NCBI RefSeq assembly: GCF_001194135.2
Contig: NW_026371731.1
Coordinates: 3,213 to 36,024 of the forward strand
Reading direction: 5' to 3'
Origin: Octopus bimaculoides
Taxonomy: Eukaryota
DNA length: 32,812 nt
Shown one piece after another: positions 2,965-27,156 of this stretch (position 1 is the stretch's first letter; each line of letters begins with the position of its first letter). The translations under genes and the position numbers were made by a program. The notes below the pieces were generated by a model, which made no database searches, was not told the origin of the DNA, and saw only the letters and a program-made list of their open reading frames with translations.

Positions 2965-3513
2965 GGTTTCAAATTTTGAATAAAAGCCAAGTTTCAGGGG
3001 AAGGGGTAAGTTGATTGATTATATTGACCCCAGTGCTCAACTGATATTTATTTTATCCAGTCCAGCACTCACTAACATTCAACTTATAACTTTACTTATA
3101 CGAAGTGCGTGTGTGCATGCATGCATTGTCAGTGAGGGTGAGAGAAAAATGTGCTACATGCTTGTAATACATGAAAGACTGTTTTCTCTTGTAAATACGT
3201 GAGATGGACATCCTGGTTACTATTGACATATAATCTTTAAACCCACTCTCCCCAACTCTTTATCTCTCTCTTTCCCTCTCCCTTTCACACACTCACAGAA
3301 TTCATATAGGCCACATCTCCATGTCATTTTGATATTTCTAACGCATGCTTCTTCCCCCCCCCCCTAAACACAGATGTTTCTTCTGCTTATATAGTTTATT
3401 TTTGTTTTGTTTCATTTTGTTTATCATTTTTTTTTTGTGGGTGAGGAGGCTAAGACCTGAACATATACCTTCTCCACCACCCCTTCACCACTGCTTGACT
3501 CTCATATACATAT

Positions 3514-3563
<50 letters not shown>

Positions 3564-4180
3564 ATAGATGATATAATAGATATAATACATTATGTGTGTA
3601 TATAAGACCCATCAAGCCAAGTAAAATTGCAGCCATGGCAGATACTGGTGTCATGCAAATGGCACCTGTGCCGGTGGCACATAAAAGAACCTTTTGAGCG
3701 GAGGCAAGGGCTGAGACCATTTGACATTATGCCATGCTTCGAGCATTGGGCCTCACAGAGGCAATGACCAAGTCCACTTGGCATTATGTTATGCTTGAGA
3801 AGAAGACCCATCAAGCCAAGTAAAACTGCAGTTGTGGCAAATATTGGTGTCACACAAATGGCACCTGTGCCGGTGGCATGTAAAAACACCCATTACACTC
3901 TCGGAGTGGTTGGTGTAAGGAAGGGCATCCAACTGTAAAAACCATGCCAAAACAGACTGAAGTTTGGTGCAGCCTCCCAGCTTACCAGCCCTGGCCAAAC
4001 TGTCCAACTCATGCCAACATGGATAATGATGATGATGATGATGATGATGACGATTCCGACTCCAAAAGTATGAAATGCGAGGCCAACACTGGTGGAATTT
4101 GAACAGAAAGACAATATGCTGCTAAGCATTTTGCCCGGTGTGCTAGCAATTCTGCCAGCTCACAGCCTTGGACTTCCATC
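2965..4180 (-). mobile_element. SINE family B split by a ~1 kb insertion (halves 2965-3057 and ~4056-4180)
   Basis: Left half ends ...TTTATTTTATC. Right half resumes CCGACTCCAAAAGTATGAAA...GGTGGAATTTGAAC...CTGCCAGCTC, the continuation seen in uninterrupted copies (9425-9598, 24105-24297). Confidence 0.7.
3058..4050 (+). mobile_element. Chimeric retro-insert: ~540 bp non-SINE sequence + 5'-truncated family E element + (GAT)n tail
   Basis: Collinear inverted homolog at 26209-27156 with the same junction; ends CCAACTCATGCCAACATGGATAAT(GAT)n; interrupts a SINE. Confidence 0.7.
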
Positions 4181-4189
4181 GGTCACAAA

Positions 4190-4506
4190 TGACCATGAGA
4201 TTGCACCTAGAAAAGTTCCCCACCGAGGCACAAGTTCGGGCAAGGTTGTTTATGGAAGACCAGCCGTCACCCACACATACCAGCCTCCCCTCTCAACACC
4301 ATTGATGCTATCCAAAGGAAAGGCAAAGGCTGATACAGCTTGGCCACCAATGACATCGCATCTCATTTTTACAGCTGAGTGAACTGGAGCAACATGAAAT
4401 AACATGTCTTGCTCAAAAACACAACACACAACCTAGTTTGGGAATCAAAGTCACTATCTCATGATTGTGAGCCCAACGCTTTAACCACTGAACTATGCAC
4501 CTTCAC
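4190..4506 (-). mobile_element. tRNA-derived SINE, family D
   Basis: Minus-strand head GTGAAGGTGCATAGTTCAGTGGTTAAAGCG..., CORE-like TTGAGCAAGACA; a second fragment lies at 10515-10633. Confidence 0.6.
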
Positions 4507-4531
4507 AAAAGAAAGCAGACCAGCCACCAGA

Positions 4532-4604
4532 TGCCGAAACCTGGGATTGAACCAGAGACATTTAGATCTTCAGTCTAATGCTCTCCTAACTGAGCTATTT
4601 TGGC
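4532..4604 (-). tRNA. tRNA-Phe(GAA)-like gene, probably a pseudogene
   Basis: GCCAAAATAGCTCAGTTAGGAGAGCATTAGACTGAAGATCTAAATGTCTCTGGTTCAATCCCAGGTTTCGGCA, 73 nt: 7 differences from the recalled metazoan tRNA-Phe, including A4:C69 mismatch and G18A. No CCA; TTTCTTTT ~16 nt downstream. Confidence 0.85.
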
Positions 4605-4794
4605 TCACCACCTTAATAATAACAATAGTAATTAAATTAAAAAAATGTAACCTTGTTCATCAGAGCATGGCAAAGACATTCAGACTTCTGCTGGCAACAA
4701 AGGTTTGAGGCCTGCTAACCTAATCTCATACTTGACATTGTTTTTAAAACACTGTAACTAATACTCCATAAAAATAAGCTGTCAGGGGTAGAGT

Positions 4795-5251
4795 ATCATC
4801 ATCATCATCATCATCGTTTAACGTCCGCTTTCCATGCTAGCATGGGTTGGACGATTTGACTGGTGAAACCGGATGGCAACACCAGGCTCCAGTCTGATTT
4901 GGCAGAGTTTCTACAGCTGGATGCCCTTCCTAACGCCAACCACTCAGAGAGTGTAGTGGGTGCTTTTACGTGTCACCCGCACGAAAACGGCCACGCTCGA
5001 AATGGTGTCTTTTATGTGCCACCCGCACAAGCCAGTCCAGGGGCACTGGCAACGATCTCGCTCGAAAATCCTACAGGAGCCAGTCAGGCGGTACTGGCAA
5101 CGGCCACGCTCAAAATGGTGCATCTCATGTGCCACCCGCACAAGAACCAGTCCAGGGGCACTGGCAACGATCTTACTTGGCTTGCCGGGTCTTCTCACGC
5201 ACAGCACATTTCCAAAGGTCTCGGTCAGTAGTCATCGCCTCGGTGAGGCCC
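4795..5251 (-). mobile_element. Non-autonomous retroelement family E with RTE-like 3' tail and internal minisatellite
   Basis: Minus strand ends CCAACCCATGCTAGCATGGAAAGCGGACGTTAAAC(GAT)n; internal repeats of GTGCCACCCGCACAAG..CCAGTCCAGGGGCACTGGCAACG; highly similar copy at 15601-15973. Confidence 0.75.
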
Positions 5252-5574
5252 ATTAAATATATCTTTTGGACAAACAAAATAAAACAAAGCAAATAAAAAC
5301 TCGAACTTCTCAATATACACTTACGAAAAAACAACAACCCCTATTAATATTAGTTTCTCAATAACAATTGCTCTAACAATTCTAAAAAATACTTCATGCT
5401 CAAATAAAGAATATATGTCAGTGAAATATGATATATGTAAGAGGTTCTGTGTTGTGTGTGTATGCATGTGTGTGTATGCATGTGTGTGTGTGTGTACTAG
5501 TATTTGGTTTAAATAATATGACTTTAGCACAAGAGGTCAGACTTCCAGTAACAAAAGATGTTATTAAAACTTAC

Positions 5575-5632
5575 CATCTAGAGTACCCTTCATAACGTAA
5601 ATGGCATTAATTTTTGGATTGTCTGAGTCACC
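5575..5632 (-). CDS. MLEC: Malectin, penultimate coding exon (58 nt, phase 0 to 1)
   Basis: tttatttatctttcattatag|GGT GAC TCA GAC AAT CCA AAA ATT AAT GCC ATT TAC GTT ATG AAG GGT ACT CTA GAT G|gtaagt = GDSDNPKINAIYVMKGTLD; matches malectin G..DNPK..A.Y.M.GT.D; phases fit both neighbouring exons. Confidence 0.93.
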
Positions 5633-5784
5633 CTATAATGAAAGATAAATAAAATTGATAACAAACACATAAGATGAAAACAATCATACATACAAGTTCA
5701 CACACATAATATCCTATTTACTGTAAGCTGAAAATTTTACTAACTGTAACAGCAGTGAATGCTGGACAAGCAATATCTATCTAT

Positions 5785-5820
<36 letters not shown>

Positions 5821-6671
5821 TTATCTTCTTCCATAAAAAAAATCTATGAAAGTGTTTCATGACAATGCTGAATCCTGTCTGGATGCTGGTGGAATAATCA
5901 TATTATTGAATATCATAACTAACATCAGGATGCATAATATTTTTAAACTTTGCTATTAAAGTGCATATGAACATGAAAATAACATTTTTTATCTGATAAA
6001 GTTAAAGAAAAAATTTTTTATATGCATATGCATTTTAACTACAAAATTAAAAGCTCACATGCAAAATGCAAGAAAATGACACCTTCCCCAACACCTAACC
6101 AGGATCTAAGCATCCGGGTCAAACATTTTCACACACATGCAGGCAGGCATAAGTGCATATGTGTGTTTATTAGGGAAACAACTATATATGCAGATTATAC
6201 TTGTTTCAGCATTCACAGCCATCCAAAGATTGAAAATGTGAAACTCAGAGCAAAGATTTAATAAAAGTTTTCAGCTTACAATAAATGAGATAAAACTCAA
6301 AAATATCATTGAATACATTTTTATTCCTTGGTATCACAATATTCTGTACTTTATCATCAAGAACATATAGATATATGCATATGTATATATATTAGCTGTA
6401 ACATAAATAGTTAAAATTTTTCAATATAAATTACAAGTCATTTATAAGTACTACCTATCACAGAAAAATCTTCTGGTAGATGAGTTGCTATGAAGTTGTG
6501 TATAATCTTCATGTGATGTGAAGGGGAGGTAATTCTGCTCGTTTATCCACTAAGAGGAAATTGGCAGAACCTATTTAATGTAACCTGTCGTGCAATCTGC
6601 CAGCAAATAATAGATATGCAGTTCAGCTTCTAGAATTGAACCTGTTCCCATTATTATATCTTAGGCCATAC

Positions 6672-6742
<71 letters not shown>

Positions 6743-6761
6743 TATTTTTATATATACTCTA

Positions 6762-7230
6762 CTTACTTTTACTCTTTTACTTGTTTCAGTCATTTGACTG
6801 CGGCCATGCTGGAGCACCGCCTTTATAGTCGAGCAAATCGACCCCCAGGACTTATTCTTTGTAAGCCTAGTACNNNNNNNNNNNNNNNNNNNNNNNNNNN
6901 NNNNNNNNNNNNNNNNNNNNNNNNNNNNNNNNNNNNNNNNNNNNNNNNNNNNNNNNNNNNNNNNNNNNNNNNNNNNNNNNNNNNNNNNNNNNNNNNNNNN
7001 NNNNNNNNNNNNNNNGACAAACAGACACACAAACATACACACACACACACACATATATATATATACGATGGGCTTCTTCCAGTTTCCTTCTACCAAAGTC
7101 ACTCACAAGGCTTTGGTCGACCCAAGGCTATAGTAGAAGACACTTGCCCAAGATGCCACGCAGTGGGACTGAACTCAGTTCCACGTGGTTGGTAAGCAAG
7201 CTACTTACCACACAGCCACTCCTGCACCTA
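6762..7230 (-). mobile_element. tRNA-derived SINE family A (CORE-like), spans an N gap
   Basis: Head GGAGTGGCTGTGTGGTAAG...GTTCAGTCCC, CTTGGGCAAGTGTCTTCTACTATAGCC core, internal (TA/TG)n, (GTAAAAGA)n tail. Confidence 0.8.
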
Positions 7231-7281
7231 CTTACTAGACATCCACTCCTGCGCCTACTTACCACACAACCACTCCTGTGA
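7201..7281. repeat. 3 x 27-bp tandem repeat of the SINE A 5' end
   Basis: Units 7201-7227, 7228-7254, 7255-7281; consensus CTACTTACCACACAGCCACTCCTGCRC. Confidence 0.85.
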
Positions 7282-7509
7282 CACACACACACACACACAT
7301 ACATATACACACGTGTACATACATACATACATACAGATATAAATGCAATATGATATATATATACCTTGTATGTTCTTATGATTGTTTTACATACATCTAT
7401 ATATGTCTAAATGTCTCTCTAAACATTGCCCTACACTCATCTATATACATCCAAATATGTGCACCTATGGATTGTCCTACACAGACCTATATATATTCTT
7501 TCTTTTATC

Positions 7510-7920
7510 TTTTTATTTGTTTCAGTCATTCAACTGCAACTAACCTGGAACACCACCTTAAGGGATCTTTTAGTTAAAGAAATTGACTCCAGGACTTATT
7601 CTTTGTAAGCCTGGTACTTATTTTAGTGGTCTCTTTTGCTGAACCGATAAGTTATGGGGACGCAAACACACCAACATCAGTTGTTAAGCGATGGTGGGGA
7701 GGGGGACAAACACAGGCACAAAGACACACACACATAAATATATACACATACATATATACAATGGGCTTCTTTAAGTTTCCCTCTACAAAATCCACTCACA
7801 AGACTTTAGTCAGCCTGAGGCTATAGTAGAGGACAATTGTTCAAGGTGCCACACAGTGGGTCTGAACCTGGAACCATATAGTTGGAAGCAAACTTCTTAC
7901 GACACAGCCTCACCTGCATA
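7510..7920 (-). mobile_element. SINE family A, full length, diverged
   Basis: Same head, core and tail as 11801-12312, in reverse. Confidence 0.75.
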
Positions 7921-8799
7921 CATATATATATATATATATATANNNNNNNNNNNNNNNNNNNNNNNNNNNNNNNNNNNNNNNNNNNNNNNNNNNNNNNNNN
8001 NNNNNNNNNNNNNNNNNNNNNNNNNNNNNNNNNNNNNNNNNNNNNNNNNNNNNNNNNNNNNNNNNNNNNNNNNNNNNNNNNNNNNNNNNNNNNNNNNNNN
8101 NNNNNNNNNNNNNNNNNNNNNNNNNNNNNNNNNNNNNNNNNNNNNNNNNNNNNNNNNNNNNNNNNNNNNNNNNNNNNNNNNNNNNNNNNNNNNNNNNNNN
8201 NNNNNNNNNNNNNNNNNNNNNNNNNNNNNNNNNNNNNNNNNNNNNNNNNNNNNNNNNNNNNNNNNNNNNNNNNNNNNNNNNNNNNNNNNNNNNNNNNNNN
8301 NNNNNNNNNNNNNNNNNNNNNNNNNNNNNNNNNNNNNNNNNNNNNNNNNNNNNNNNNNNNNNNNNNNNNNNNNNNNNNNNNNNNNNNNNNNNNNNNNNNN
8401 NNNNNNNNNNNNNNNNNNNNNNNNNNNNNNNNNNNNNNNNNNNNNNNNNNNNNNNNNNNNNNNNNNNNNNNNNNNNNNNNNNNNNNNNNNNNNNNNNNNN
8501 NNNNNNNNNNNNNNNNNNNNNNNNNNNNNNNNNNNNNNNNNNNNNNNNNNNNNNNNNNNNNNNNNNNNNNNNNNNNNNNNNNNNNNNNNNNTATATATAA
8601 GGACACAGGAAATGTATCAAGGCTGACAAAAAGTGGTGCTGCTTCCTAGGGTTAAATAGCAGTAGTATTATTCCCTTCATGGGACTGTCACATTAAGTTG
8701 ATAGCATACAACTACTTTATCATATTACTACTGCATAAATCTCTCTGAGAGATTTCGAAATATATTATTTCTATTTATATATATATTTGTATGTATGTA

Positions 8800-9025
8800 T
8801 GCATGCATGTTTATATTTGTCTCCTATCACTGCATGACAACCAGTGTTGGTGTTTATGTCCCTATGACTTAGTGGCTTGACAAAAAGAGACTGATAGAAT
8901 AAGTACCAGGTTTAAAGAAAAAAATAAATAGTAAGGGGTTGATTCATTTGACTAAAATACTTCAAGGTAGTGCTCCAGCATGGCTACAGTCTAATGGCAG
9001 AAACAAATAAAAAATAAAAAGATTA
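8800..9025 (+). mobile_element. SINE family A, 3' half
   Basis: GATAGAATAAGTACCAGG...GTGCTCCAGCATGGCTACAGTCTAATGGCAGAAACAAATAAAA. Confidence 0.65.
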
Positions 9026-9424
9026 GCTCAAGTAAAAACAACAAAACCTAATAAAATAAATTTTTTCCCCCAAAAAAATGAGAAAAAAAAAATCAAAAAG
9101 AAATTTTTTTTAAATTAGAAAAAAATCAGAAAGTTTCTTCTAAGTATGCACAAAACCAGTTAAAGCCAGTCTGAAGCTAGTGGATCCTTTATATTATCAA
9201 ATGGCTCACAGGTTTTTATTCATATTTATCAAACACAGATGAATGAAAAGCTATGTTGGCATCATTATCCTGTGTGATCTAAACTAAAAATAGTTAAAAT
9301 CATGTTTTACTATTTTTTGTTCTTTTCTTTAAATCCTCTTCTAAATAATGTGGAATGTTCAGGAAGTCAGCAAAGGTTAAGACACATCACCTTGTGAGAT
9401 TAATATTCTTTTCTTATTTTGCAT

Positions 9425-9598
9425 AAGGCCAACAATTTCGGGGGAGGCGGGGTGCTCAGTTGATTACATTGACCCCAGTGCTCAACTGACATTTTATTAA
9501 CCCTGAACAGTGGAATTTGAACTCTGAATGTAAAGACAGATGAAATGAGGCTAAGCATTTTGCCAGGTGTGCTAACAATTCTGCCAGCTTGCCACCAT
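9425..9598 (-). mobile_element. SINE family B
   Basis: ATTACATTGACCCCAGTGCTCAACTG...GGAATTTGAACTC...CTGCCAGCTTGCCACC. Confidence 0.7.
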
Positions 9599-10059
9599 AC
9601 TATGAGATTATATATGAAGTATAGGGGATCTCTGAATGGAGGTAGTACCTATGATGTCTGGCAACTGCATCTTCTCAGGGATGGTCAGGGGGTCAGGCAT
9701 CCCTGGTCTTCATTCAACTCCTAATCTCTCACTTGATGGCTCTTAATGCCACACCCTGGTATCCCACGTCAGCAGGTGAGCTAAACCAAGTATGGGAATG
9801 GTGTTAAAACTGCACCAGTAGGTGTAAAACCCTGGGTAAAGCTTCCCAAGGAATCACTGCCTAGGGTGGAGGAACCTACTCAGATCAACAGCCTAGTGCT
9901 TAGGGCCTAAGTGTTGGTATCTCAAGTAGGTTTTGGCTAACAGCTTAGAGAGGAATGGGCACTGTCAAGCTAACTTGCCCATGATGCATTCATGATAACA
10001 ACCAGACCAGAACCAATATCAGATTGGTCATCGCCTGAGTTAACACCAAAAAGTGGATA

Positions 10060-10330
10060 GACCTCAATGAATGACTTCATGCCATCCAGTTAGTTGTCAC
10101 ATTTTTAAATGCAGTCTAAAATGTCTTTGTGTATAGCAGCAGCACCTTCTCCAAATGTAGGAACAATATTTCACTGTGGGTCTCATTTGAGCTTTGTAGA
10201 GGGCTCATAATTGTTGGGTTAGGATGGGATACCTGAAGTATTATCTGGCTCTGAAGATGAAGGTCAGACTTTGAGATGCAGTTTTTGCCTGATCAAAAGC
10301 AAGTTATTTACTGGTTTTGAACATGTCAGC
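10060..10330 (-). mobile_element. Decayed CR1/Jockey-like LINE RT fragment
   Basis: Minus-strand translation ASQSLTFIFRAR*YF...L*ALYKAQMRPTVKYCSYIW; same region as 1990-2545. Confidence 0.65.
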
Positions 10331-10398
10331 TTAGCTTTAGTGAGGAGTACCCAGTAAGAAATTCTTTTAAGTTAGTTTCTGTCTTGAGCCTACAGGTT

Positions 10399-10481
10399 CA
10401 TTAGGTTAAAGGTTATTCCAGTTTTTGAAATGTTTAAACAAGTGAGACTATAACACTCTCACCTGGACTGGTCAACAGTCC
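10399..10481. repeat. 83-bp direct repeat, copy 1 (copy 2 at 11474-11556), with two hairpins
   Basis: CATTAGGTTAAAGGTTATTCCAGTTTTTGAAATGTTTAAACAAGTGAGACTATAACACTCTCACCTGGACTGGTCAACAGTCC; 4 substitutions versus copy 2. Confidence 0.9.
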
Positions 10482-10514
10482 CCCACAATGTTAACTCCAG
10501 CTGCTTCTAGCACA

Positions 10515-10633
10515 TACTTTTAGTTGAATGGACAGGAGCAACATGAAATGAAATATTTGCTCAAGGAAGAATATATCACCCACTTTTAGGGCTGTGAACC
10601 CAACACCCTAACCACAAAGTCATGTGCTTTCAC
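10515..10633 (-). mobile_element. SINE family D fragment
   Basis: GGAGCAACATGAAATGAAATATTTGCTCAAGG...CCCTAACCAC matches 4386-4506. Confidence 0.5.
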
Positions 10634-10671
10634 AGTAAGAAATTCAATGTTTATAAAATGAAACTACTTAC

Positions 10672-10851
10672 CTTAATAAACTCCACAGTAATTTTGCCAT
10701 CAATCTGTGATGTTTCCCCATTTACTCTCACTTTACCATTTTTCACTGAAAATGTTAGCATCTCATCATGTGCCACACCTCTTCCAACTTTGGCAAAAAT
10801 ATCAAGTTCATCTACAATGGTGTGTTCTCCATTTAAAACCACATCAAATAT
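10672..10851 (-). CDS. MLEC: Malectin internal coding exon (180 nt, phase 0-0)
   Basis: ctctttttgcag|IFDVVLNGEHTIVDELDIFAKVGRGVAHDEMLTFSVKNGKVRVNGETSQIDGKITVEFIK|gtaagt; matches malectin [29 protein letters not shown]...GKLYIEFVK. Confidence 0.95.
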
Positions 10852-11473
10852 CTGCAAAAAGAGAATGTTGAACACATACTTAGAGTCATCTCCATGGGGT
10901 AGTGAACAGTACAATTATATGCTTGGGTTTTGGCTGTTAAAGTGCCAGACCCAATGTTGTTAATTAACTTCAACTCAACCTGATACATGTTTATTCAGCC
11001 ATATTGAGATAACTGAGTACATCATCCCATGTGTCCTTCCATTTTTTAAGAAAGTTTGTTATGATTTGAGGGAGATTTATTTGCTATTTCTAGCATATTG
11101 AGCCACAACATAAAAGTTCTCCTGTTGGCTCATATGCTATTGCTGTTGATGATGTCGCTGCAAGCAGCCTCAATCTTTTTTTAAGAACCTCAGTCATTTT
11201 AAAGAAATTTTGAGGCACCAAATTCATTTAACCTCCATCAAAAGTTCTTCATTGATTCTGCCCCCACCCCCATCCTCCCACCTAACTCCACCTTTTTTTC
11301 AGACCCGCTGATGTCCATGTTATTGACTTTTTGCACTTTGAGTGCAAGCATAGCCACATGGTTAAGAAGTGAACCTCATAATCATGAGTTCCATGGTTTA
11401 ATTCCATTTTGAAATACTTTAGACAAGTATCTCCTGTCACAGTCTCAAGACTTGTTGAGTGAAATCAGGTAGA

Positions 11474-11556
11474 CATTAGGTTAAAAGTTATTCCAGTTTT
11501 TGAAGTGTTTAAATAAGTGAGATTATAACACTCTCACCTGGACTGGTCAACAGTCC
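11474..11556. repeat. 83-bp direct repeat, copy 2
   Basis: 79/83 identical to 10399-10481 by eye. Confidence 0.9.
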
Positions 11557-11800
11557 TTCACAAGGCCACCCTATCAGGTGGCCTGCATTTTAACCCTTTG
11601 CTTGTCCTGTATGTATGTCACACATGATACACATGATACACAGGATATTCCCCTGGTGTCCATGCATCATATTTGATACACATTCCCAATTCTTTTTCAC
11701 CCACCAGAGTAACGTGAGACTTTCAAAAGGAAGGCATTACATTATTCAGAATGTGTGAAACAAAGGACAAATTAAAAGTTTGGAAACAAGAATGGACATA

Positions 11801-12312
11801 TAGGCGTAGGAGTGGCTGTGTGGTAAGTAGCTTGCTTACCAACCACATGGTTCTGAGTTCAGTCCCACTGCGTGGAACCTTGGGCAAGTGTCTTCTACTA
11901 TAGCCTCGGGCCGACCAAAGCCTTGTGAGTGGATTTGGTAGACGGAAACTGAAAGAAGCCCATCGTATATATGTATATATATATATATATATNNNNNNNN
12001 NNNNNNNNNNNNNNNNNNNNNNNNNNNNNNNNNNNNNNNNNNNNNNNNNNNNNNNNNNNNNNNNNNNNNNNNNNNNNNNNNNNNNNNNNNNNNNNNNNNN
12101 NNNNNNNNNNNNNNNNNNNNNNNNNNNNGTGTGTCTGTGTTCGTCCCCCTCAACATCGCTTGACCAATAGAATAAGTACTAGGCTTACAAAGAATAAGCT
12201 CTGGGGTCGAGTTGCTCGACTAAAGGCGGTGCTCCTGCATGGCCGCAGTCAAATGACTGAAACAAGTAAAAGAGTAAAAGAGTAAAGAGTAAAAGAGTAA
12301 AGAGTAAAAGAG
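11801..12312 (+). mobile_element. SINE family A, full length, spans an N gap
   Basis: AGGCGTAGGAGTGGCTGTGTGGTAAG (A-box-like), GTTCAGTCCC (B-box-like), CCTTGGGCAAGTGTCTT (CORE-like), (GTAAAAGA)n tail. Confidence 0.85.
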
Positions 12313-12964
12313 TATTTAGGACAAACATATGAAAATGCTTTGGACAAGCAAAGGATTAATTCAAGGAATTCAGCCTCGTCATATACAGTATCACACCGAT
12401 TCTGCCTGAGGTTTACATTAAGAGTACACATGTTTATGAAATAATCAGCCATTTTAACTATGATGAACTGGTAGTTCTCTTGATGCTATAATTGTAACAC
12501 ACACTATCAAAATTGTCAGAGGAGCCATTTACTTACATTTATTTCTGCAACCCCTGCATTAAGCATTTAGCCTGATTATTTCTTGCTGAGAGTTTATCCC
12601 TTTACAACAACTCTCTATTGCATTCCTTAAGCCCCTACTACCCAAACCTATAAAATCAAAATTAAATATTGAACTCAAATACTTGCACTTATCCCATACT
12701 AGGAGAACCTAAAAAAAGGGAAATAATCAATGTCTCTTGTACTCATAAATAGTAGTTCACTCTAATGATAGGAATTTCTATACATTCACTTGATCTGCTA
12801 GAAATAACATCCAAATCTCCCTTGTATCACATTCCATCATCATTAATAACAACAAAAAAAAAACATTGAATAATAATGTGCTGGGCATCAAAAATACAGT
12901 ATGGTCAAGGCTTATAACAGTTCTATTCAATAAGGGTCAATTTGGGCTAAACAACACCAATAAT

Positions 12965-13110
12965 AGCAACAATCAATATCAGTTTCAAATTTTGGCAAAG
13001 GGCCAACAGTTTTTGAGAGGAGGGGTAAGTTGATTACATTGACCCAGTCCTTCACTGATATTCGTTTTATTGACCTTGAAAGGGTGAAAGGCAAAGTCAA
13101 CCTTGATGGA
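12965..13110 (-). mobile_element. SINE family B fragment
   Basis: GTTGATTACATTGACCCAGT...GAAAGGCAAAGTCAACCT. Confidence 0.6.
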
Positions 13111-13151
13111 ACTAATAGAAACAATTTATATTAGTATTTACAATATATTAA

Positions 13152-15190: not shown

Positions 15191-15600
15191 AACTAATTTC
15201 TGTGTGTCACACTTTGACCCCACACCTCCTCACTATTCAATGACACTTCTACTATTCCTTGTGCTGGGGTGAGACTAACAGTAAAGACGGTGAGGGTGGT
15301 GGTGAAGACAGAGAGAGAGTGAGAGAGAAAGAAAGAAAAAGAGAGGGAGAGAAAGAGAGACAAAGAAATTTAGGGAGAGTTGATGATGTTTTATTAAAAG
15401 TAGTAGTGTTGATGGTGACAGTGGGAATAATAATAATAGGAGAGAGACAAAGAGTGGGTATGTGAGAAAAAGAGGGAGATGATGTACAACTTTGTTTAAC
15501 CATGTCTCTTTGACAGAAATTCCTGTGGCCAACATACCGAACCAGCATACTGAACACTATCATTTTTGTTTTATTTTTTGCTTCTTGAATATATATATAT

Positions 15601-15973
15601 CATCATCATCATCATCATTGTTTAACGTTCGCTTTCCATGCTAGCATGGGTTGGACGATTTGACTGAGGACTGGTGCAACCGGATGGCTACACCAGGCTC
15701 CAATCTAATTTGGCAGAGTTTCTACAGCTGGATGCCCTTCTTAACGCCAACCACTCAGAGAGTGTAGTGGGTGCTTTTACATGTCACCCGCACGAAAACG
15801 GCCACGCTCGAAATGGTGTCTTTTATGTGCCACCCGCACAAGAGCCAGTCCAGGGGCACTGGCAACGATCTCGCTCGGAAACCCTACAAGGCCAGTCAGG
15901 CGGTACTGGCAACGGTCACGCTCAGGATGGTACATCTTATGTGCCACCCGCACAAGAGCCAGTCCAGGGGCCC
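15601..15973 (-). mobile_element. Family E retroelement, 5'-truncated, young
   Basis: Near-identical to 4795-5160, including (CAT)n tail and minisatellite. Confidence 0.75.
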
Positions 15974-15987
15974 TATATATATATATA

Positions 15988-16611
15988 CAAGGGTGAGTTA
16001 AAAAGTAATGCCATTTTGTTTAGGACAGATATAATTACCAACACAGGAACATGTATCATACATCAAAATGAAGCTGGTCTTCTGTGGATTACATCCCTAC
16101 TTCTCAANNNNNNNNNNTACATCAAAATGAAGCTGGTCTTCTGTGGATTACATCCCTACTTCTCAACATAGTCACCGTTTCTCTCAATAGCAATGTTCCA
16201 CCTTCGAATAAGAGCATGTATCCCTGTCCTGTAAAATTCTGTTCACTGTTCTTTGAGCCACTTCTTCACTACAGTTTTCACTTCCTCATCACTGGACTAT
16301 CATCGTCACTGAACTATCATCTCTTTGGCCCCATGAAAGAGTGTTTGAGAGGCAAACATTATTCCAGTGACGAGGAAGTGAAAACTGTAGAGAAGAAGTG
16401 GCTCAAAGAACAGTCAACAGAATTTTACGGAACAGGGATACATGCTCTCATTCGAAGGTGGATCATTGCTACTGAGGGAAGAGGTGACTATGTTGAGTAG
16501 TAGGGATGTGATCCACAGAGGACCAGCTTCATTTTGATGTATGATACATGTTCCTGTGTTGGTAATTATACTTGTCCTAAACTAAATGGCATTATTTTTG
16601 ACTTACCCTTG
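15988..16611. mobile_element. Fold-back mariner derivative with ~250-bp inverted arms
   Basis: TA|CAAGGGTGAGTTAAAAAGTAATGCC ... GGCATTATTTTTGACTTACCCTTG|TA. Right arm plus loop encode the mariner C-terminus YHLFGPMKECLRGKHYSSDEEVKTVEKKWLKEQSTEFYGTGIHALIRRW...GDYVE*. Confidence 0.9.
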
Positions 16612-17343: not shown

Positions 17344-18321
17344 TGAGGGCTGGGAAGAAGATGCTGTCTTCAGAAGTGGGACCATTGGGAGGGTGTACAC
17401 TGTGCATCGTAATCAACAAGAGTGCTTGTTTCTGCATCTACTGCTGCACACTGTCAGAGGTCCTACATCATTCACAGACCATTGAAGACACAATGGGGAT
17501 GTCTGCATGACATACAGAGAAGCCTGTGGCAAACATGGACTACTGAAGGACGATGCTCATTGGGACCAGACACTGGAGGAGTCAGCAGAGCAGCAAGTCA
17601 ACTGCATCCAGCTATTTTCTATCATGTTGATGACATGTGGCTTGGGTGAACTTCTGAAGCTTTAGGGACCCACAAAACCAACATGGCAGAGGACATCCTA
17701 CAAAGGATTCAGCAGAAAATGTTCAATAATGCCATTTACTTGACCTGGACACCTGAGTGCAAGTTATGGGAGGTCAAGGCATTGCCACATTTGGTCTGCC
17801 TCAACCAGAGCAGGCAGCAATCTCACAACAGAGTACCTGTGAGAAATCAGCTATAACATCGAGGAAATGACGACATATATAGCTGATAACGAACAAACTG
17901 ATGGAGGACCAACTTGATGTTTATAAGACCATTATTTTGAGCACTGAAAGTGAAAGAGGAGGTCTTTTTTTTCTGGATGCTCCAGTTCCACCTGGTGGAA
18001 CTGGCAAAACATTTGTCATCAACCTTCTTCTGGCTAAACTGCATCAAATGAAACACATTGCTATAGCAGTGGCATCAAGTGGAATAGCTGCAACTCTGCT
18101 AAGTGGTGGAACTGACTTCACAGTTTGAGTATTCATAACTTATTGGGATTTCCTAAAAACAAGATCCTATGTAAGACATTTCGGTATTATCTGTAAATGC
18201 ACAAAAACTGTTTTAAGAGCTACATACTTTGTATTGTTCTTATTGGATTAGTAAAACAATTATGAGAACAGAACCAAGGGATAAGCCCCGCTTTTCTGGG
18301 AATTACCGGGTACGTCAGCTA
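17344..18321 (+). mobile_element. Helitron RepHel remnant (Pif1-type helicase region), frameshifted
   Basis: IGRVYTVHRNQQECLFLHLLLHTVRGPTSFTD / TYREACGKHGLLKDDAHWDQTLEE / LFFLDAP...GGTGKTFVINLLLAKL...IAVASSGIAATLLSGG; then non-coding sequence ending ACCGGGTACGTCAGCTA, like a Helitron 3' end. Confidence 0.9.
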
Positions 18322-21270: not shown

Positions 21271-21318
<48 letters not shown>

Positions 21319-21339
21319 AAATGTACAGAAAACAAAAGA

Positions 21340-22390: not shown

Positions 22391-23275
22391 TATAAAGCCT
22401 TGGGAGTGAAATTTGGTAAACAGAAAATGTGCAGTATGTTTGTGGCTATAGTAGTGATAGAGATGTATAGAAATGTTCAGTAAATACATCATGGGAAAAT
22501 ATATCAAAATATATCGTAGTAAATACATTGTCTGAATTTTCATTGCAAGCTAATTAACATTATAAGCCAATTGAATCATCATCTGCCTTTTATCCACGAC
22601 ATAAATACATCTTTAAATAAGTGCATTGCCTTTCATTAACAAATAAAACTTGTAATTTGATTTTTTTACTGCAACGCTAGAAAAGATGTATGTTATGTAA
22701 TAAAAGAAGAAAGGATCGATCAATGAAATATTATATCCCCTTCTTAATTTCTGAATAATCATAGAAAAAAAAATTTCCCTATCTATGTGCATGACAATAA
22801 TCTAATTACATCATATTATTAACATTAATTACTACAGAAATGTAACAATGTAGTCTTAATTCATTATATTTTAATTGGACCTAATGAGGAAATAATGATG
22901 GTAATAGTCTCAAAGTAAATAAATATGTTGCCTTTCATTAACATTGTTAAACAAAATTTGAAGACAAAGAAGAGTTATTAGTAACAAGTGTACTCAGTGT
23001 ACACATGAAAGAAAAAACAAACAAAACAAAAACAAATAAACAAAACAAATAAAAGTTATTTTTTCAAAATAGAACCATGACCATAAAGAAAATGCACTAT
23101 TAACACTATTTTAACCTTTGAGCATTATAAACAGATTGGCTGCTTGTTCAGGGATTGGAATTGATTGAGGTTGTTCATCATTTATTCAATATACACAGAA
23201 ATAGGAAAATTTATACAGTTTATATCTACTACATAGGTTACATATATTTTAACCCTGTATTTATACTATTCGAGT

Positions 23276-23643
23276 GGAGACGCAATGGCCCAGTGGTTAG
23301 GGCAGCAGACTCACGGTCATAGGATCGCGGTTTCGATTCCCAAACCGGGCGTTGTGAGTGTTTATTGAGCGAAAACACCTAAAAACTCCGCAAGGCTCCT
23401 GCAGGGGATGGTGGCGAACCCTGCTGTACTCTTCCACCACAACTTTCTCTCGCTCTTTCTTCCTGTTTCTGTTGTGCCTGTATTTCAAAGGGACAGCCTT
23501 GTCACACTGTGTCACGCTGAATATCCCCGAGAACTACGTTAAAGGTACACGTGTCTGTGGAGTGCTCAGCCACTTGCACGTTAATTTCACAAGCAGGCTG
23601 TTCCGTTGATCGGATCGACTGGAACCCTTGACATCGTAAGCGA
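23276..23643 (+). mobile_element. SINE family C, full length
   Basis: GGAGACGCAATGGCCCAGTGGTTAGGGCAGC...GGTTTCGATTCCC; reverse complement of 856-1243. Confidence 0.8.
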
Positions 23644-23852
23644 TGCTCCAATGTCTGCTTTGGCATGATTTCTACGACAGGATGCACTTCTTAATGCTAA
23701 CCATTTCACAAAGTGTACTGGGTGCTTTTTACATGGCACTAGCACTAGTAGTTCATAAGAAAGGATCCCTTGACTGAGGTGAGCATATCACTGAGGGAGG
23801 TGGCTTTATGCCAGGTGACGAGAAGGACAGTGTGATAGTGTATTTACCAACA
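23641..23852. repeat. 212-bp exact repeat (copies 23641-23852, 24847-25058, 25366-25577)
   Basis: Identical by eye from CGATGCTCC to TTACCAACA; the third copy is a contig bounded by two 10-N gaps. Confidence 0.9.
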
Positions 23853-23868
23853 ACAACATATTATTTGA

Positions 23869-24050
23869 AACCTTTAGCATTCAGGTTAATTTATGAAATG
23901 TAATGCTTATTCATTCACATTTTCAAAAATTAATCATGTTGCTCTTGTAACTTCAAGATTTTGAAGATGTGATTTTTTTATTTTTAGAATTGTCATTGTA
24001 GAGTAGGTGTGAGAGGCTGGATCTGGCCAGTTTCAACATAAAACATGTTA
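23869..24050. mobile_element. piggyBac-type MITE fragment
   Basis: CCTTTAGCATTCAG...GAAATGTAATGCTTATTCATTCACAT...GGATCTGGCCAGTTTCAACATAAAAC. Confidence 0.6.
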
Positions 24051-24104
24051 ATTTGTCTGAGAAACATCAGCTTAGTAATTCGTTCGACTACAGATGCAAA
24101 GCCT

Positions 24105-24297
24105 GAAATTTTGAGGGAGGGAGCTACTCAATTACAATGACCTCAGTGTTCAGCGAGTACTTATTTTATTGACCACGTAAGGATGAAAGTTGGCCTTGAC
24201 AACATTTGAACTCAGAACATAAAGCCAGAAGAAATGCTGCTTCGTGCTTTGTCCAGCATGCTAACAATTCTGCCAGCTTGCCACCATTCGCCAGCTT
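24105..24297 (-). mobile_element. SINE family B
   Basis: Same motifs as 9425-9598. Confidence 0.65.
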
Positions 24298-24774
24298 AAC
24301 AATGACAGTTATTTTGCTAAATTTTTCATCATTTAAAAATTTATTTGAAATAAAAGCAGTGTATTTCAACAGAAATACAGCAACAAAACAGTTAAACTGG
24401 GGGGAAAGAAAAACATATAAAAAAAGACAAATTATGAGCAATGCTTTCCAAATATTTTGGTATTTTGGCAGCTTTGATGTTCACTGATGACACATTGACT
24501 TCTGACTTTTTATTTCTTTCTGTGATGTGTCATGTCTGTAGCAGTAATACACAGTTTGACTGATTATTACTTTGTTTCTTGGTTGTTCCTTTTTCAAAAG
24601 TTCTAAAAAGTTTCCAGATCAAAGGATGGAATATTTTGTCTCCTGAATCTTTTTTTTTTTCATTCTTAATAGAAAGCAGTCTGTGTATAAATACTTTCAA
24701 TAAAGCTTTAAAATGTGTTAACTCCACAAATAATAACTTTAAATAACGTTTAGCAATGTATTTTTTCTTCATCA

Positions 24775-25058
24775 ACATTTAATATCTGTTTTCCATGCTG
24801 ACATGGGTTGGATGGTTTGACAGGAACCCATGAGCCAGAGGACTCGCGATGCTCCAATGTCTGCTTTGGCATGATTTCTACGACAGGATGCACTTCTTAA
24901 TGCTAACCATTTCACAAAGTGTACTGGGTGCTTTTTACATGGCACTAGCACTAGTAGTTCATAAGAAAGGATCCCTTGACTGAGGTGAGCATATCACTGA
25001 GGGAGGTGGCTTTATGCCAGGTGACGAGAAGGACAGTGTGATAGTGTATTTACCAACA
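24775..25058 (-). mobile_element. Family E-related retroelement, 3' part
   Basis: TTTTCCATGCTGACATGGGTTGGATGGTTTGAC tail signature. Confidence 0.6.
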
Positions 25059-25100
25059 ATGAATTTAGTAAGATGATGAATCTACTGATGAAGTATTTAA

Positions 25101-25300
25101 CCCTTTAGCATTTAAACCAGTTATATCCGGCCAAAATATTCTACCTATTTTATATTCAAACCAGCCAGATCCAGCCTTTCACACCTACCCTACAATGTCA
25201 TTATAAAAAACAACCGCAACATCAAAATCTCAAATTTATGAGATAATGCATGATTAATTGAAAACAATGTGAATAGACAAGCTTTACAATTGACAGATAA
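25101..25300. mobile_element. piggyBac-type MITE, right end lost
   Basis: TTAA|CCCTTTAGCATTTAAACC...; homologous to 2570-2789. Confidence 0.6.
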
Positions 25301-25587
25301 TGTACTGGTTTTAATGTAATTACCTTGTGGTGACCAGCAAATCATATATATATATNNNNNNNNNNCGATGCTCCAATGTCTGCTTTGGCATGATTTCTAC
25401 GACAGGATGCACTTCTTAATGCTAACCATTTCACAAAGTGTACTGGGTGCTTTTTACATGGCACTAGCACTAGTAGTTCATAAGAAAGGATCCCTTGACT
25501 GAGGTGAGCATATCACTGAGGGAGGTGGCTTTATGCCAGGTGACGAGAAGGACAGTGTGATAGTGTATTTACCAACANNNNNNNNNN

Positions 25588-25618
<31 letters not shown>

Positions 25619-25984
25619 CAGTGCATCAAACCAAAAGCAGATATGAGGTTGATGTAACCAATTAAAACCTTTGAAGGTGGTTTCCCAGCATGGTTGCAGT
25701 TACAAGACCAAAACAAGTAACAGAATAAAAGAAAAGTATACATATCTATTATTTAATAAAAAAAAAAAGATTGGTAGAATCTGTAAAGTGTCAAACAAAA
25801 TGCAATGCAGTACTTTATTATTTCATTCCTTTATGTTTGGAGTTCAAATATTGTTTGGGTCAACTTTTCCATCCTGCTTCTGGGGTTGATAATATAATTA
25901 CCAGTCATGAACTGGGTTGAAGATTTATTATAGTCAACTGTACCACTTCCTTGAAATGTGTGATCATGTACCTATATGTATCTA

Positions 25985-26213
25985 TATCAACATCATCATC
26001 ACCATCATCATGATCTATTCTCTGCAGTCTGTTTGGTGTACCATTGCACATGGTAGGTCTTCTCAGAGCACTTGGAGGCTTCACATAGTTGCTTTATGTA
26101 GGTTCGATGTGGTCTACCAACCTTTGCATACCCAGAGAAGAACAGCACTGATAATATCATCATTTGCTCTCCAGCAATGTCAGCAAATCTTGTTCTTTTT
26201 TTCTCTGATGGGT
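25985..26213 (-). mobile_element. RTE-clade LINE 3' end fragment
   Basis: Frameshifted IRE(K)RTRFA(G)HCWRANDDIISAVLLW...GRPHRTYIKQLCE, then a (GAT)-rich tail. Confidence 0.7.
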
Positions 26214-26665
26214 TGGATGGTTTGACTAGGGCTGGTAAGCTAGGAGGCTGCACCAGACCCCAGTCTGCTTTGGCATGGTTTCTACAGCTGGATGTCCTTC
26301 CTAACGCCAACCAATCCAAGTTTAGTGGGTGCTTTAATATGCCACCAGTTTGGGTACCATTTGCATGACACTGATATCCACCACAACTGCAGTTTTACTT
26401 GGCTTGATGGGTCTTCTCAAGCACAGCATAATGCCAAATGGACTCAGTCATTGGCTCCGTGAGGCACAATGCTCAAAGCATGGCACAATGCCAAATGGTC
26501 TTGGTCCTTGGCTCCATGAGACCCAACACTAGAAAGGTGCTTTTACGTGCCACCAACACAGGTGTCATTTGTGTGACGCCAATATCTGCCACAACTGCGA
26601 TTTTATTTGGCTTGATGGGTCTTATATATATATATATATACACATAATGCACTATATTTATTATA

Positions 26666-26714
<49 letters not shown>

Positions 26715-27074
26715 GAGAGAATGCCAGGCAGTGGTGAAGGGGTAATAGAGAAGTTATATGTTCAGATCTTAGCCTCCCCACCCACAAAATATAAAATAAA
26801 CAAAATAAAACTAAAACAAACAAAAACAAACTATATAAGCAGAAGAAACATCTGTGTTAGGAAAAAAAAAGCATGCATTAAAAATATCAAAACGACATGG
26901 AGATGTGGCCTATATGAATTGTGTGTATGTGTGGGGGGAGATAAAGAGGTGGGGAGAGTGGGTTTGAAGATTATGTGTTAATAGTAACCAGGATGTCCAT
27001 CTCACATATTTTACAAGAGAAAACAGTCTTTCATGTATTGCAAGCATGTAACACATTTTTCTCTCACACTCACT

Positions 27075-27110
<36 letters not shown>

Positions 27111-27156
27111 TCATATAAGTAAAGTTATATGCTGAATGTTAGTGAGTGCTGGACTG
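26209..27156 (-). mobile_element. Inverted homolog of the 3058-4050 chimeric unit (possible source copy)
   Basis: Collinear; about 94% identity over a 112-bp stretch compared by hand (3144-3255 vs 26950-27063); both copies yield the ORF piece ERKMCYML.IHERLFSLV. Confidence 0.8.

What the first reader, a model, noticed from the sequence alone, without database searches (positions are those of the whole stretch)
3058..27156. ~1 kb chimeric retro-insert that appears to be a local copy of another part of the same gene
Seen: 3058-4050 (+) and 26209-27156 (-) are collinear. Each has ~540 bp of ordinary-looking non-SINE sequence fused at the same junction (..CATTATGTG(TA)nAGACCCATCAAGCC..) to a truncated family E element. 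The 3058 copy ends in a (GAT)n tail and cleanly splits a family B SINE, so it arrived as one unit. The 26-27 kb copy is in the malectin sense orientation and continues into non-homologous intron past 27156. Inference: a read-through or pre-mRNA transcript was primed at the E tail by RTE machinery, 5'-truncated at 27156, and reinserted 23 kb away in the opposite orientation, i.e. a 5' transduction of host intron in cis. Alternatively, both are members of an undescribed composite retroposon family.
Basis: partly seen in the sequence, partly recalled or inferred. Interest (0 to 1): 0.7.

Follow-up and report, generated by a model that had tools for sequence, protein, structure and literature searches.

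The report
Two copies of a composite retroposon
Two diverged ~1 kb copies of one unit (a 440 bp non-SINE head, a TA-rich linker and a SINE-type body) lie about 23 kb apart at the Octopus bimaculoides malectin locus; both look like ordinary RNA-mediated insertions of a repeat, not parent and daughter, but no octopus genome was available to count copies.

Summary
3058-4012(+) and 27156-26208(-) align collinearly: 79.5% identity over 995 columns, 14% substitutions. Both begin at the same base (CAGTCCAGC...) and share the (TA)n/AGACCCATCAAGCC junction.

Copy 1 is a clean retro-insert. It has a canonical SINE-E 3' end and a (GAT)n tail (4022-4054), and it splits a B SINE with a target-site duplication (TSD) of at most 2-3 nt.

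- It lacks the last ~45 bp of E.
- It is fused at 26208/26207 to a ~200 bp LINE ORF C-terminus (inferred RTE-type) whose stop codon runs into its own (GAT)n tail.
- The whole 1.18 kb unit is bracketed by a 7-nt direct repeat, ATACATA (empirical p about 0.005-0.01).

So copy 2 also looks like an insertion, not native intron. It cannot in its present form be the template of copy 1.

A daughter landing within 23 kb of its parent by random retro-integration has a chance of about 2e-5. Same-family pairs are common in this window.

Best reading (about 0.6): both are independent copies of a composite, LINE-mobilised non-autonomous retroposon. The cis-transduction idea is not refuted (about 0.12). Genome-wide copy number could not be tested because no octopus genomic DNA is reachable with these tools. 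The finding is ordinary and of low-to-moderate interest.

The parts
3058..3497 (+). Copy 1, 5' non-SINE head (U). It includes a GT/GCAT microsatellite at about 3105-3130 and a conserved imperfect 20-nt inverted repeat at 3141-3189.
   Evidence: Aligns to 27156-26722(-) with 12% substitutions. Inverted repeat. No tRNA, 5S, 7SL or other Rfam family. No further copies or fragments in the window.
3498..3596 (+). Copy 1, (TA)n microsatellite and AT-rich linker ending in CATTATGTG(TA)n, at the junction with the E-type body.
   Evidence: Same junction in copy 2. Another E copy (15974-15598) is inserted in a (TA)n with a TA target-site duplication, so this junction looks like an old E insertion into a (TA)n.
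3597..4021 (+). Copy 1, E-type SINE body. Modules: X (about 3597-3683), Y (about 3684-3748), Y' (about 3749-3803), X' (about 3804-3885), then the shared E 3' domain (about 3886-4021).
   Evidence: Internal repeat 3604-3686 vs 3803-3885 at 88%. Only 3867-4048 aligns to the other E copies 4982-4795 and 15793-15599. A Y-Y'-X' arrangement also appears exonised in another O. bimaculoides gene model, P0127.
4022..4054 (+). Copy 1, (GAT)n tail.
   Evidence: Read directly. The same kind of tail ends the other E copies and the LINE fragment at 26015-25980.
2955..3057 (.). Left half of the B SINE split by copy 1.
   Evidence: Joined flanks align across the junction to B copies 9410-9589, 1325-1410, 12968-13121 and 24131-24278. 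At most 2-3 nt are duplicated.
4055..4230 (.). Right half of the B SINE split by copy 1.
26722..27156 (-). Copy 2, 5' non-SINE head (U). It has the same first base (CAGTCCAGC), a (GT)n at about 27112-27073 and an inverted repeat at 27064-27016.
26208..26721 (-). Copy 2, (TA)n linker plus E-type body. It is truncated about 45 bp before the E terminus and has no E tail.
   Evidence: Homology to copy 1 and to the other E copies stops at 26208.
25980..26207 (-). 5'-truncated LINE 3' end fused to copy 2. The ORF C-terminus reads ...RTRFADIAGEQMMILSVLFFSGYAKVGRPHRTYIKQLCEASKCSEKTYHVQWYTKQTAENRS*. The stop codon (26010-26008) runs into a (GAT)n tail (26015-25980).
   Evidence: ORF; tail. No Pfam hit. 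The RTE-clade assignment is inferred from the GRPxxTY motif and the near-absent 3' UTR ending in a trinucleotide repeat (my knowledge of the RTE class).
27157..27163 (-). Upstream copy of the 7-nt direct repeat ATACATA, abutting the 5' end of copy 2.
   Evidence: The second copy is at 25981-25975, directly after the tail. Empirical p is 0.005-0.01 against window-sampled flanks, rising to 0.1-0.3 if both flanks are assumed TA-rich for independent reasons.
25975..25981 (-). Downstream copy of the ATACATA direct repeat (candidate target-site duplication).
508..12452 (-). Annotated malectin-B-like gene model, with exons at 12452-12324, 10851-10672, 5632-5576 and 738-508. Copy 1 sits antisense in the last intron.
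   Evidence: Three of the four exons are identical to XP_014783029.1 (P0001); the first annotated exon (12452-12324) matches it at 97.7%, 42 of 43 residues. Pfam Malectin hit at 2.6e-09.

Best explanation
Both segments are independent retro-inserted copies of one composite, non-autonomous retroposon RNA. That RNA has a defined 5' end (CAGTCCAGC...). It consists of a ~440 bp non-tRNA head, a ~100 bp TA-rich linker containing an internal (TA)n, an E-type SINE body and a (GAT)n tail.

The composite probably arose once, when a 5'-truncated E element inserted into a (TA)n tract and an upstream-initiated transcript carrying that flank became retrotransposition-competent. This is a 5'-extension of the SVA/LP-SINE kind. 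It was then copied by a LINE reverse transcriptase that uses (GAT)n tails, inferred to be RTE-clade.

Copy 1 is a plain full-length insertion into a B SINE in the last malectin intron.

Copy 2 is a chimeric insertion. Reverse transcription began on the LINE's own RNA and copied ~200 nt plus the tail. It then switched template to the composite RNA about 45 nt from its 3' end and ran to its 5' end. This left one target-site duplication (ATACATA) around the whole unit.

Shown: the homology, the shared termini and junctions, the tails, the split SINE, the missing E end, the fused LINE-like fragment and the flanking repeat.

Inferred: the RTE identity, the template switch, the existence of further copies elsewhere, and the origin of the head.
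For: 1. Identical 5' terminus and internal junctions in both copies. Both parts of the unit are equally diverged.
2. Copy 1 ends exactly at a (GAT)n tail and splits a B SINE, so it is RNA-mediated.
3. Copy 2's E end is replaced by a LINE-like ORF terminus with its own (GAT)n tail. One template-switch event explains this, and it means the present copy 2 cannot be copy 1's template.
4. A 7-nt direct repeat sits immediately 5' of CAGTCC and immediately 3' of that tail, with p about 0.005-0.01.
5. The composite's two insertion sites and that of E2 (15974-15598) are all AT-rich or (TA)n: TTATTTTATC, TTATACATA and (TA)n. This fits endonuclease targeting.
6. Same-family pairs are common in this window. 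Examples are 877-1246 vs 23643-23273 at 92% and 4794-5162 vs 15598-15974 at 92.6%, plus many B, E and other copies. Two copies in 33 kb is therefore not special.
7. By inference, a random retro-integration lands within 23 kb of its source with probability about 46 kb / 2.7 Gb, or 2e-5. A family of N copies gives about N times that.
8. Mollusc retroposons that combine a non-tRNA (LINE-derived) head with a SINE body and tail are documented (PMC4758252). RTE LINEs are reported as potentially active in O. bimaculoides (PMC9115989). K2P 0.16 between the copies, about 0.08 per copy, fits the reported octopus SINE/LINE bursts at JC 0.065-0.09 (PMC13282606).
Against: - No third copy was seen. The window holds none, not even a diverged fragment.
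- No octopus genomic DNA could be searched. All external searches were uninformative because the SINE-E controls also failed.
- The head looks like ordinary microsatellite-bearing genomic sequence and has no recognisable promoter or RNA-gene origin.
- Copy 1 has essentially no target-site duplication while copy 2 would have 7 nt.
- The 7-nt repeat lies in TA-rich low-complexity sequence. Its significance falls to p about 0.1-0.3 if both flanks are TA-rich for unrelated reasons.
- The RTE fragment could instead be a later insertion, nicked at a (TA)n target-site duplication and deleting the E end.
- Close proximity is what a local mechanism would predict.
Confidence: 0.6

Rival explanations
1. 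Copy 2 is native sequence of the malectin transcription unit into which an E element once inserted at a (TA)n. A sense read-through or pre-mRNA was reverse-transcribed from the E tail, 5'-truncated at 27156, and reinserted 23 kb away in the opposite orientation as copy 1. Later a 5'-truncated RTE inserted at the source and deleted the E terminus and tail.
For: - Only two copies are visible, and they are close together on one scaffold.
- Copy 2 is in the malectin sense orientation.
- U looks like ordinary intron with microsatellites, and the E body abuts a (TA)n as an E insertion would.
- The TA-like stretch after the RTE tail (ATATAGATACATATAG) could be the remnant of the (TA)n target-site duplication of that E insertion.
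Against: - The present copy 2 lacks the E end and tail that copy 1 carries, so an extra insertion-plus-deletion event is needed.
- The 7-nt direct repeat bracketing copy 2 plus the RTE fragment would be coincidence, with p about 0.005-0.01 under a random truncation point.
- No malectin exon is found upstream of copy 2 in the window, so its presence in the pre-mRNA is unproven.
- No local bias is known for target-primed reverse transcription. The chance of landing within 23 kb is about 2e-5 (inference).
- Distance and orientation depend on eight scaffold gaps.
Confidence: 0.12
2. One of the two visible copies is the direct parent of the other through its own internal promoter. For example, copy 1, or an equivalent full-length element, would be transcribed from its first base and give copy 2 by template switching. 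The family would then be very small, with only a few copies.
For: - Both copies share the same 5' terminus, abutting their flanks.
- Copy 1 has the complete 3' end needed to be a template, and copy 2 has a derived chimeric 3' end.
Against: - No promoter is recognisable in U.
- Copy 1 is itself an insertion, so at least one further parent must have existed.
Confidence: 0.08
3. DNA-level local inverted duplication. A break in the B SINE was repaired by copying about 1 kb from the nearby locus (templated insertion or replication template switch), with no RNA intermediate.
For: DNA-templated events are strongly local and often inverted, which would explain the 23 kb spacing and the orientation (inference).
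Against: - Copy 1's 3' boundary coincides with the end of the (GAT)n retroposon tail, and its 5' boundary is sharp.
- Homology does not extend into either flank.
- The neighbouring 92% pair (877-1246 vs 23643-23273) is not collinear with an inverted segmental duplication.
- The source would still have needed an intact E end.
Confidence: 0.05
4. Assembly artefact. One copy would be a misplaced or duplicated contig.
For: This draft scaffold shows redundancy nearby. A 212-214 bp block is present three times at 100% identity (23640-23853, 24846-25059, 25366-25577), and the last is bounded by two 10-N gaps.
Against: - The two copies differ by 14% substitutions plus many indels and have different flanks and 3' ends.
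- Each lies inside an uninterrupted contig (1-6873 and 25588-32812).
- Only their relative placement could be artefactual.
Confidence: 0.02

Closest known systems
SVA-type composite retroposons and their 5'-transduction subfamilies (e.g. the MAST2-SVA lineage; PMC10681720, PMC12593883, PMC3287187)
   Same: Both are non-autonomous composites mobilised in trans by a LINE. A stretch of ordinary genomic sequence was captured at the 5' side by upstream-initiated transcription and then propagated together with the SINE-like 3' part. Copies share the same 5' end.
   Different: - This is an octopus element with a (GAT)n tail rather than poly(A).
- The inferred partner is RTE-like, not L1.
- There is no VNTR, Alu-like or SINE-R module.
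- Amplification beyond two copies is not demonstrated.
Mollusc 'LP-SINEs' and jigsaw SINEs (Matetovici et al. 2016, PMC4758252)
   Same: These are short mollusc retroposons whose head is not tRNA-derived. They share the body and/or tail with conventional SINE families of the same genome, and they evolve by exchange of modules.
   Different: - The LP head is a ~70 bp LINE 5'-UTR piece. Here the head is ~440 bp of unknown origin, followed by a ~100 bp TA-rich linker, and carries microsatellites.
- Homology of U to any LINE 5' UTR was not testable.
LINE template-switch chimeras (U6/L1 and other chimeric retrogenes; PMC4476161, PMC2104539)
   Same: Copy 2 has the expected layout: the 3' end of the LINE RNA with its tail, fused head-to-tail to another RNA copied up to its 5' end, with one pair of direct repeats around the whole unit.
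   Different: - Here the second template would be a non-autonomous retroposon RNA entered about 45 nt from its 3' end.
- The LINE is RTE-like.
- The event is inferred from one locus only.
Octopus E-type SINEs with (GAT)n tails, as seen elsewhere in this window (4794-5255, 15598-15974)
   Same: They share the 3' ~190 bp domain and the (GAT)n tail. They also insert in AT-rich or (TA)n sites.
   Different: The composite carries different upstream modules (X-Y-Y'-X') and about 540 bp of extra 5' sequence. It is only 75-78% identical to the other E copies in the shared domain.

Membership tests
LINE-mobilised (target-primed reverse transcription) non-autonomous retroposon insertion | 3' end is a simple-repeat tail of the same type as that of a LINE in the same genome | tested here: met
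   Copy 1 has a (GAT)n tail at 4022-4054. The LINE-ORF fragment has a (GAT)n tail at 26015-25980. Other E copies end in (GAT)n.
LINE-mobilised (target-primed reverse transcription) non-autonomous retroposon insertion | Insertion interrupts a pre-existing sequence (an empty site can be reconstructed) | tested here: met
   Met for copy 1. The joined flanks align across the junction to other B SINE copies. For copy 2 there is no paralogous or orthologous empty site available.
LINE-mobilised (target-primed reverse transcription) non-autonomous retroposon insertion | Target-site duplication flanking the whole insert | tested here: inconclusive
   Copy 1 has at most 2-3 nt. Copy 2 plus the LINE fragment has a 7-nt ATACATA repeat, with p of 0.005-0.01 unconditioned and 0.1-0.3 if both flanks are taken as TA-rich.
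Repeat family (composite retroposon with many dispersed copies) | More than two genomic copies sharing the same termini and internal junctions | not testable with these tools
   There are two copies in the window and no further fragment. No octopus genomic DNA is in the searchable collections, and the SINE-E control patterns also found nothing.
Classical SINE (Pol III, tRNA/5S/7SL head) | 5' head derived from tRNA, 5S or 7SL with A/B boxes | tested here: not met
   ARAGORN and Rfam find nothing in U or at its 5' end. The only tRNA-like hit in the window is 4532-4604(-), outside the element.
   Copy 2 lacks the E terminus and tail (homology stops at 26208) and carries a LINE fragment instead. 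Continuity with the native flank is contradicted, weakly, by the flanking direct repeat. A later rearrangement could rescue the model.
   This needs a genome-wide BLASTN.
   The sense orientation is met. However, copy 2 is 13.7 kb upstream of the first annotated exon, and no N-terminal malectin exon was found between 12.5 and 32.8 kb. Such exons may lie in gaps or beyond the window.
Segmental (DNA-level) duplication | Homology extends into unrelated flanks, with boundaries unrelated to element termini | tested here: not met
   Homology starts sharply at CAGTCC in both copies. It ends inside the E 3' domain of copy 2, at 4012/26208. Copy 1 alone continues through the canonical E terminus to the end of its (GAT)n tail at 4054, an element terminus. 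Neither flank is homologous.
RTE-clade LINE (for the fragment at 26207-25980) | Reverse transcriptase/endonuclease phylogeny within RTE; very short 3' UTR ending in short tandem repeats | tested here: inconclusive
   Only about 65 C-terminal residues are present. There is no Pfam hit. The stop codon overlapping the (GAT)n tail fits the RTE hallmark (my knowledge; Malik and Eickbush 1998 is cited in the reference list of PMC9115989). Phylogeny is not possible.

The most novel reading that the evidence does not exclude
Copy 1 really is an in-cis retrocopy. A stretch of malectin-locus primary transcript ending in an intronic E-SINE tail would have been reverse-transcribed by RTE machinery and reinserted 23 kb away in the same locus. 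This would imply that nascent, chromatin-tethered RNA can serve as a template for target-primed reverse transcription near its own gene, giving local retro-duplication of intron sequence.
Probability: 0.12. Interest if true: 0.6.

Novelty: new member of a known kind. Interest (0 to 1): 0.25.

Why it matters
If it is a family, it is one more example of how mollusc and cephalopod SINE-type elements acquire new 5' heads by capturing flanking sequence. It also gives one clean candidate for LINE template switching in an octopus. That is useful for repeat-library curation in a genome where hundreds of SINE families remain unclassified (PMC13282606), but it is not surprising. It would matter more only if the two loci proved to be the sole copies. 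That would point to locally biased retro-duplication, which has no established precedent.

Tried and rejected
1. Counting copies through the protein databases.
- A six-frame translation of U from both copies, run against 5.8 G proteins, gave no hit.
- A six-frame translation of the X-Y-Y'-X' body gave only P0127, an O. bimaculoides kinase model with exonised SINE pieces.
- An exhaustive search with the ORF at 26476-26856 returned only YIYIY low-complexity hits and nothing on its E part.
- Conclusion: octopus repeat ORFs are not in these databases, so the nulls say nothing about copy number.

2. Exact-pattern scans. A U 26-mer was scanned against metagenome contigs and genome contigs. An abundant SINE-E 24-mer control was scanned against those two and viral contigs. 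All returned zero, so no octopus DNA is there.

3. Orthologous loci.
- P0001 is not on record.
- The Logan contig L001 (SRR9969973) is from a distant cephalopod, and only the exon aligns, at 79%.
- Window ORFs spanning U or the tail/B junction are not on record.

4. K-mer search of the O. vulgaris transcript FASTA in the supplements of PMC9115989. It found no U k-mers, but no E control k-mers either. The PMC13282606 supplement holds no sequences.

5. Diverged U fragments in the window. nhmmer profile and word-7 BLASTN found only microsatellite matches.

6. An RNA-gene or promoter origin for U. Rfam at E up to 10 and ARAGORN found nothing credible.

7. A larger inverted segmental duplication that includes the 92% pair 877-1246/23643-23273. 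Rejected because the two pairs are not collinear.

8. Copy 2's post-26208 sequence as a decayed E end. Rejected because it reads as an open LINE-type C-terminus that starts right at the junction.

Full report
**Identity of the window**

The exons at 10851-10672, 5632-5576 and 738-508 (minus strand) are identical to Octopus bimaculoides malectin-B-like XP_014783029.1 (P0001), and the model's first annotated exon (12452-12324) matches it at 97.7%. The 10.7 kb exon hits the Pfam Malectin domain. The window is therefore a draft O. bimaculoides scaffold carrying the 3' half of the malectin gene on the minus strand.

The annotated model lacks the N-terminal half of the malectin domain. tblastn with full-length malectins from other animals finds no such exon anywhere in 12.5-32.8 kb.

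**The observation**

BLASTN of 2500-4799 against the window gives one long inverted match: 3055-4012 against 27159-26208, at 79.5% identity over 995 columns. A MAFFT alignment with flanks shows three things:
- Homology starts exactly at CAGTCCAGC (3058 / 27156).
- It runs collinearly through a non-SINE region, a (TA)n tract, the junction CATTATGTG(TA)nAGACCCATCAAGCC and a SINE-type body.
- It stops at 4012 / 26208.

Substitution divergence is 12% in the non-SINE part and 16.5% in the SINE part. At non-CpG sites the figures are 11.3% and 14.8%, which is not a significant difference. The whole unit therefore has a single age, with K2P about 0.16 between the copies.

**Assembly gaps**

No N run lies inside or within 390 bp of either copy. 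Copy 1 sits in contig 1-6873 and copy 2 in contig 25588-32812.

Eight N runs separate them, however. Two of these are 10-N runs (25356-25365 and 25578-25587) that were not in the scan program's list. Nearby, a 212-214 bp block occurs three times at 100% identity, and one occurrence is bounded by those two gaps.

The copies themselves are real, because 14% divergence excludes an assembly duplicate. Their spacing, relative orientation and linkage rest on scaffolding.

**Anatomy of copy 1**

- 3058-3497 is a head (U) with no similarity to anything else in the window and no tRNA, 5S, 7SL or other Rfam signal. It holds a GT-type microsatellite and a 20-nt imperfect inverted repeat that is conserved in both copies.
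- 3498-3596 is (TA)n plus an AT-rich linker.
- 3597-4021 is the 'E' body.
- 4022-4054 is a (GAT)n tail.

Only the last ~190 bp of the body is shared with the other E copies in the window, at 75-78% identity. Upstream of that it has its own modules in the order X, Y, Y', X' (the internal repeat is 88% identical). A Y-Y'-X' arrangement also turns up, exonised, in an unrelated O. bimaculoides gene model (P0127). The body is therefore a genuine SINE subfamily rather than something private to this locus.

The flanks 2940-3057 and 4055-4230, when joined, align straight across the junction to three or four other B SINE copies. At most 2-3 nt are duplicated. Copy 1 is a clean, tail-terminated insertion into a B SINE. 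It lies antisense in the last malectin intron.

Homology to copy 1, and to every other E copy, stops at 26208. That is about 45 bp short of the canonical E terminus (...CATGCTAGCATGGAAAGCGGACGTTAAAC(GAT)n).

An open reading frame begins directly at 26207. It ends ...RTRFADIAGEQMMILSVLFFSGYAKVGRPHRTYIKQLCEASKCSEKTYHVQWYTKQTAENRS*. Its stop codon (26010-26008) runs into a second (GAT)n tail at 26015-25980.

A GRPxxTY-type C-terminus, with virtually no 3' UTR before a trinucleotide-repeat tail, is what I know of RTE-clade LINEs. Pfam has no model for this region, so the clade assignment is inferred.

The 7 nt immediately 5' of CAGTCC (ATACATA, 27163-27157) recur immediately after this tail (25981-25975). 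Against flanks sampled from the window, a match this long has p about 0.005-0.01. If one assumes both flanks are TA-rich for unrelated reasons, p rises to 0.1-0.3.

The composite's two insertion sites and that of another E copy, E2 at 15974-15598 (which sits in a (TA)n with a TA target-site duplication), are all AT-rich. This fits endonuclease-targeted integration.

**Interpretation**

Copy 1 is RNA-mediated. The question is whether copy 2 is its native source or another insertion. Four considerations bear on this.

First, the present copy 2 cannot be the template, because it lacks the E end and tail that copy 1 has. A single template switch explains the layout in one event and predicts the flanking direct repeat. 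In that event, the reverse transcriptase starts on LINE RNA and then jumps to the composite RNA. Such switching is well documented for L1 and other LINEs (PMC4476161, PMC2104539).

Second, if copy 2 is an insertion, both copies are full-length with the same first base. That implies an RNA with a defined 5' end, meaning a real element.

Third, proximity. A retrocopy that integrates at random lands within 23 kb of its source with probability of roughly 2e-5. For a family of N copies, the chance of a neighbour is N times larger. This window alone holds other same-family pairs at 92% identity.

Fourth, composite heads on SINE bodies are a known theme in molluscs (PMC4758252). RTE LINEs are reported as potentially active in O. 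bimaculoides (PMC9115989). The per-copy divergence of about 0.08 fits the reported octopus SINE/LINE bursts (PMC13282606).

I therefore favour two independent copies of a composite, LINE-mobilised retroposon (about 0.6). That capture would have happened at some locus and been followed by propagation. It would not be a parent-daughter pair in this window.

**What remains open**

The decisive test is the copy number of U in the genome. I could not run it. The protein databases, the metagenome, prokaryote and viral contig collections, Logan look-ups and paper supplements all lack octopus repeat DNA. In each case a SINE-E control also came back empty. The one orthologous contig I retrieved is from a distant cephalopod.

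Consequently the local-transduction reading (about 0.12), a tiny family in which one visible copy fathered the other (about 0.08), and a DNA-level templated insertion (about 0.05) are not excluded. The DNA-level reading is disfavoured by the tail-coincident boundary and the absence of flank homology.

**Verdict**

This is most likely an undescribed or unrecognised member of a known kind of element, and of modest interest. The chimeric copy 2 is the most instructive detail.

Noticed in passing
window 4532-4604 (-): A tRNA-Phe(GAA)-like sequence scores 61 bits in Rfam and is also called by ARAGORN. It lies between the split B SINE and an E copy. It could be a genuine tRNA gene or the head of a tRNA-derived SINE.
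   Followed up: no
window 23640-23853, 24846-25059, 25366-25577: A 212-214 bp block is present three times at 100% identity, and the third occurrence is bounded exactly by two 10-N gaps. This is likely assembly redundancy or gap-fill artefact close to copy 2.
   Followed up: partly
window 25356-25365 and 25578-25587: Two 10-N gaps lie inside the finding's span but were not in the list supplied by the scan's program.
   Followed up: yes
window 877-1246 vs 23643-23273: This is another two-copy inverted pair (92% identity over 371 bp), just upstream of the last malectin exon and again near 23.5 kb. It is not collinear with the composite pair, so it is probably an unrelated younger repeat family.
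   Followed up: partly
window 4794-5162 vs 15598-15974: Two E copies are 92.6% identical. The second is 5'-truncated and inserted into a (TA)n tract with a TA-repeat target-site duplication, which suggests a preference of the mobilising endonuclease for (TA)n or AT-rich sites.
   Followed up: partly
window 12324-12452 (-) and the whole gene model: The RefSeq model XP_014783029.1 starts with a dubious exon (MADYFINMC...) and lacks the N-terminal half of the malectin domain. The true 5' exons are not in the sequenced part of the window.
   Followed up: partly
window 17883-18125 (+): A PIF1-like helicase fragment (Pfam PF05970, 1.2e-15), probably a Helitron remnant.
   Followed up: no
window 32421-32810 (+): An open reverse-transcriptase fragment (weak RVT_1 hit) runs off the end of the window. 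A long (GAT/AAT)n tract lies upstream at 31788-31875.
   Followed up: no
window 16118-16541 and 28776-29084: Two self-inverted stretches (85.6% over 425 bp and 74% over 314 bp). The first starts right after the 10-N gap at 16108-16117. They could be head-to-head repeat copies or an assembly fold-back.
   Followed up: no
protein P0127 (O. bimaculoides, UniRef): A predicted 1098-aa serine/threonine kinase model has an N-terminal ~500 residues that are largely translated SINE fragments in both orientations. This is an annotation artefact that exonises E-type repeats.
   Followed up: partly
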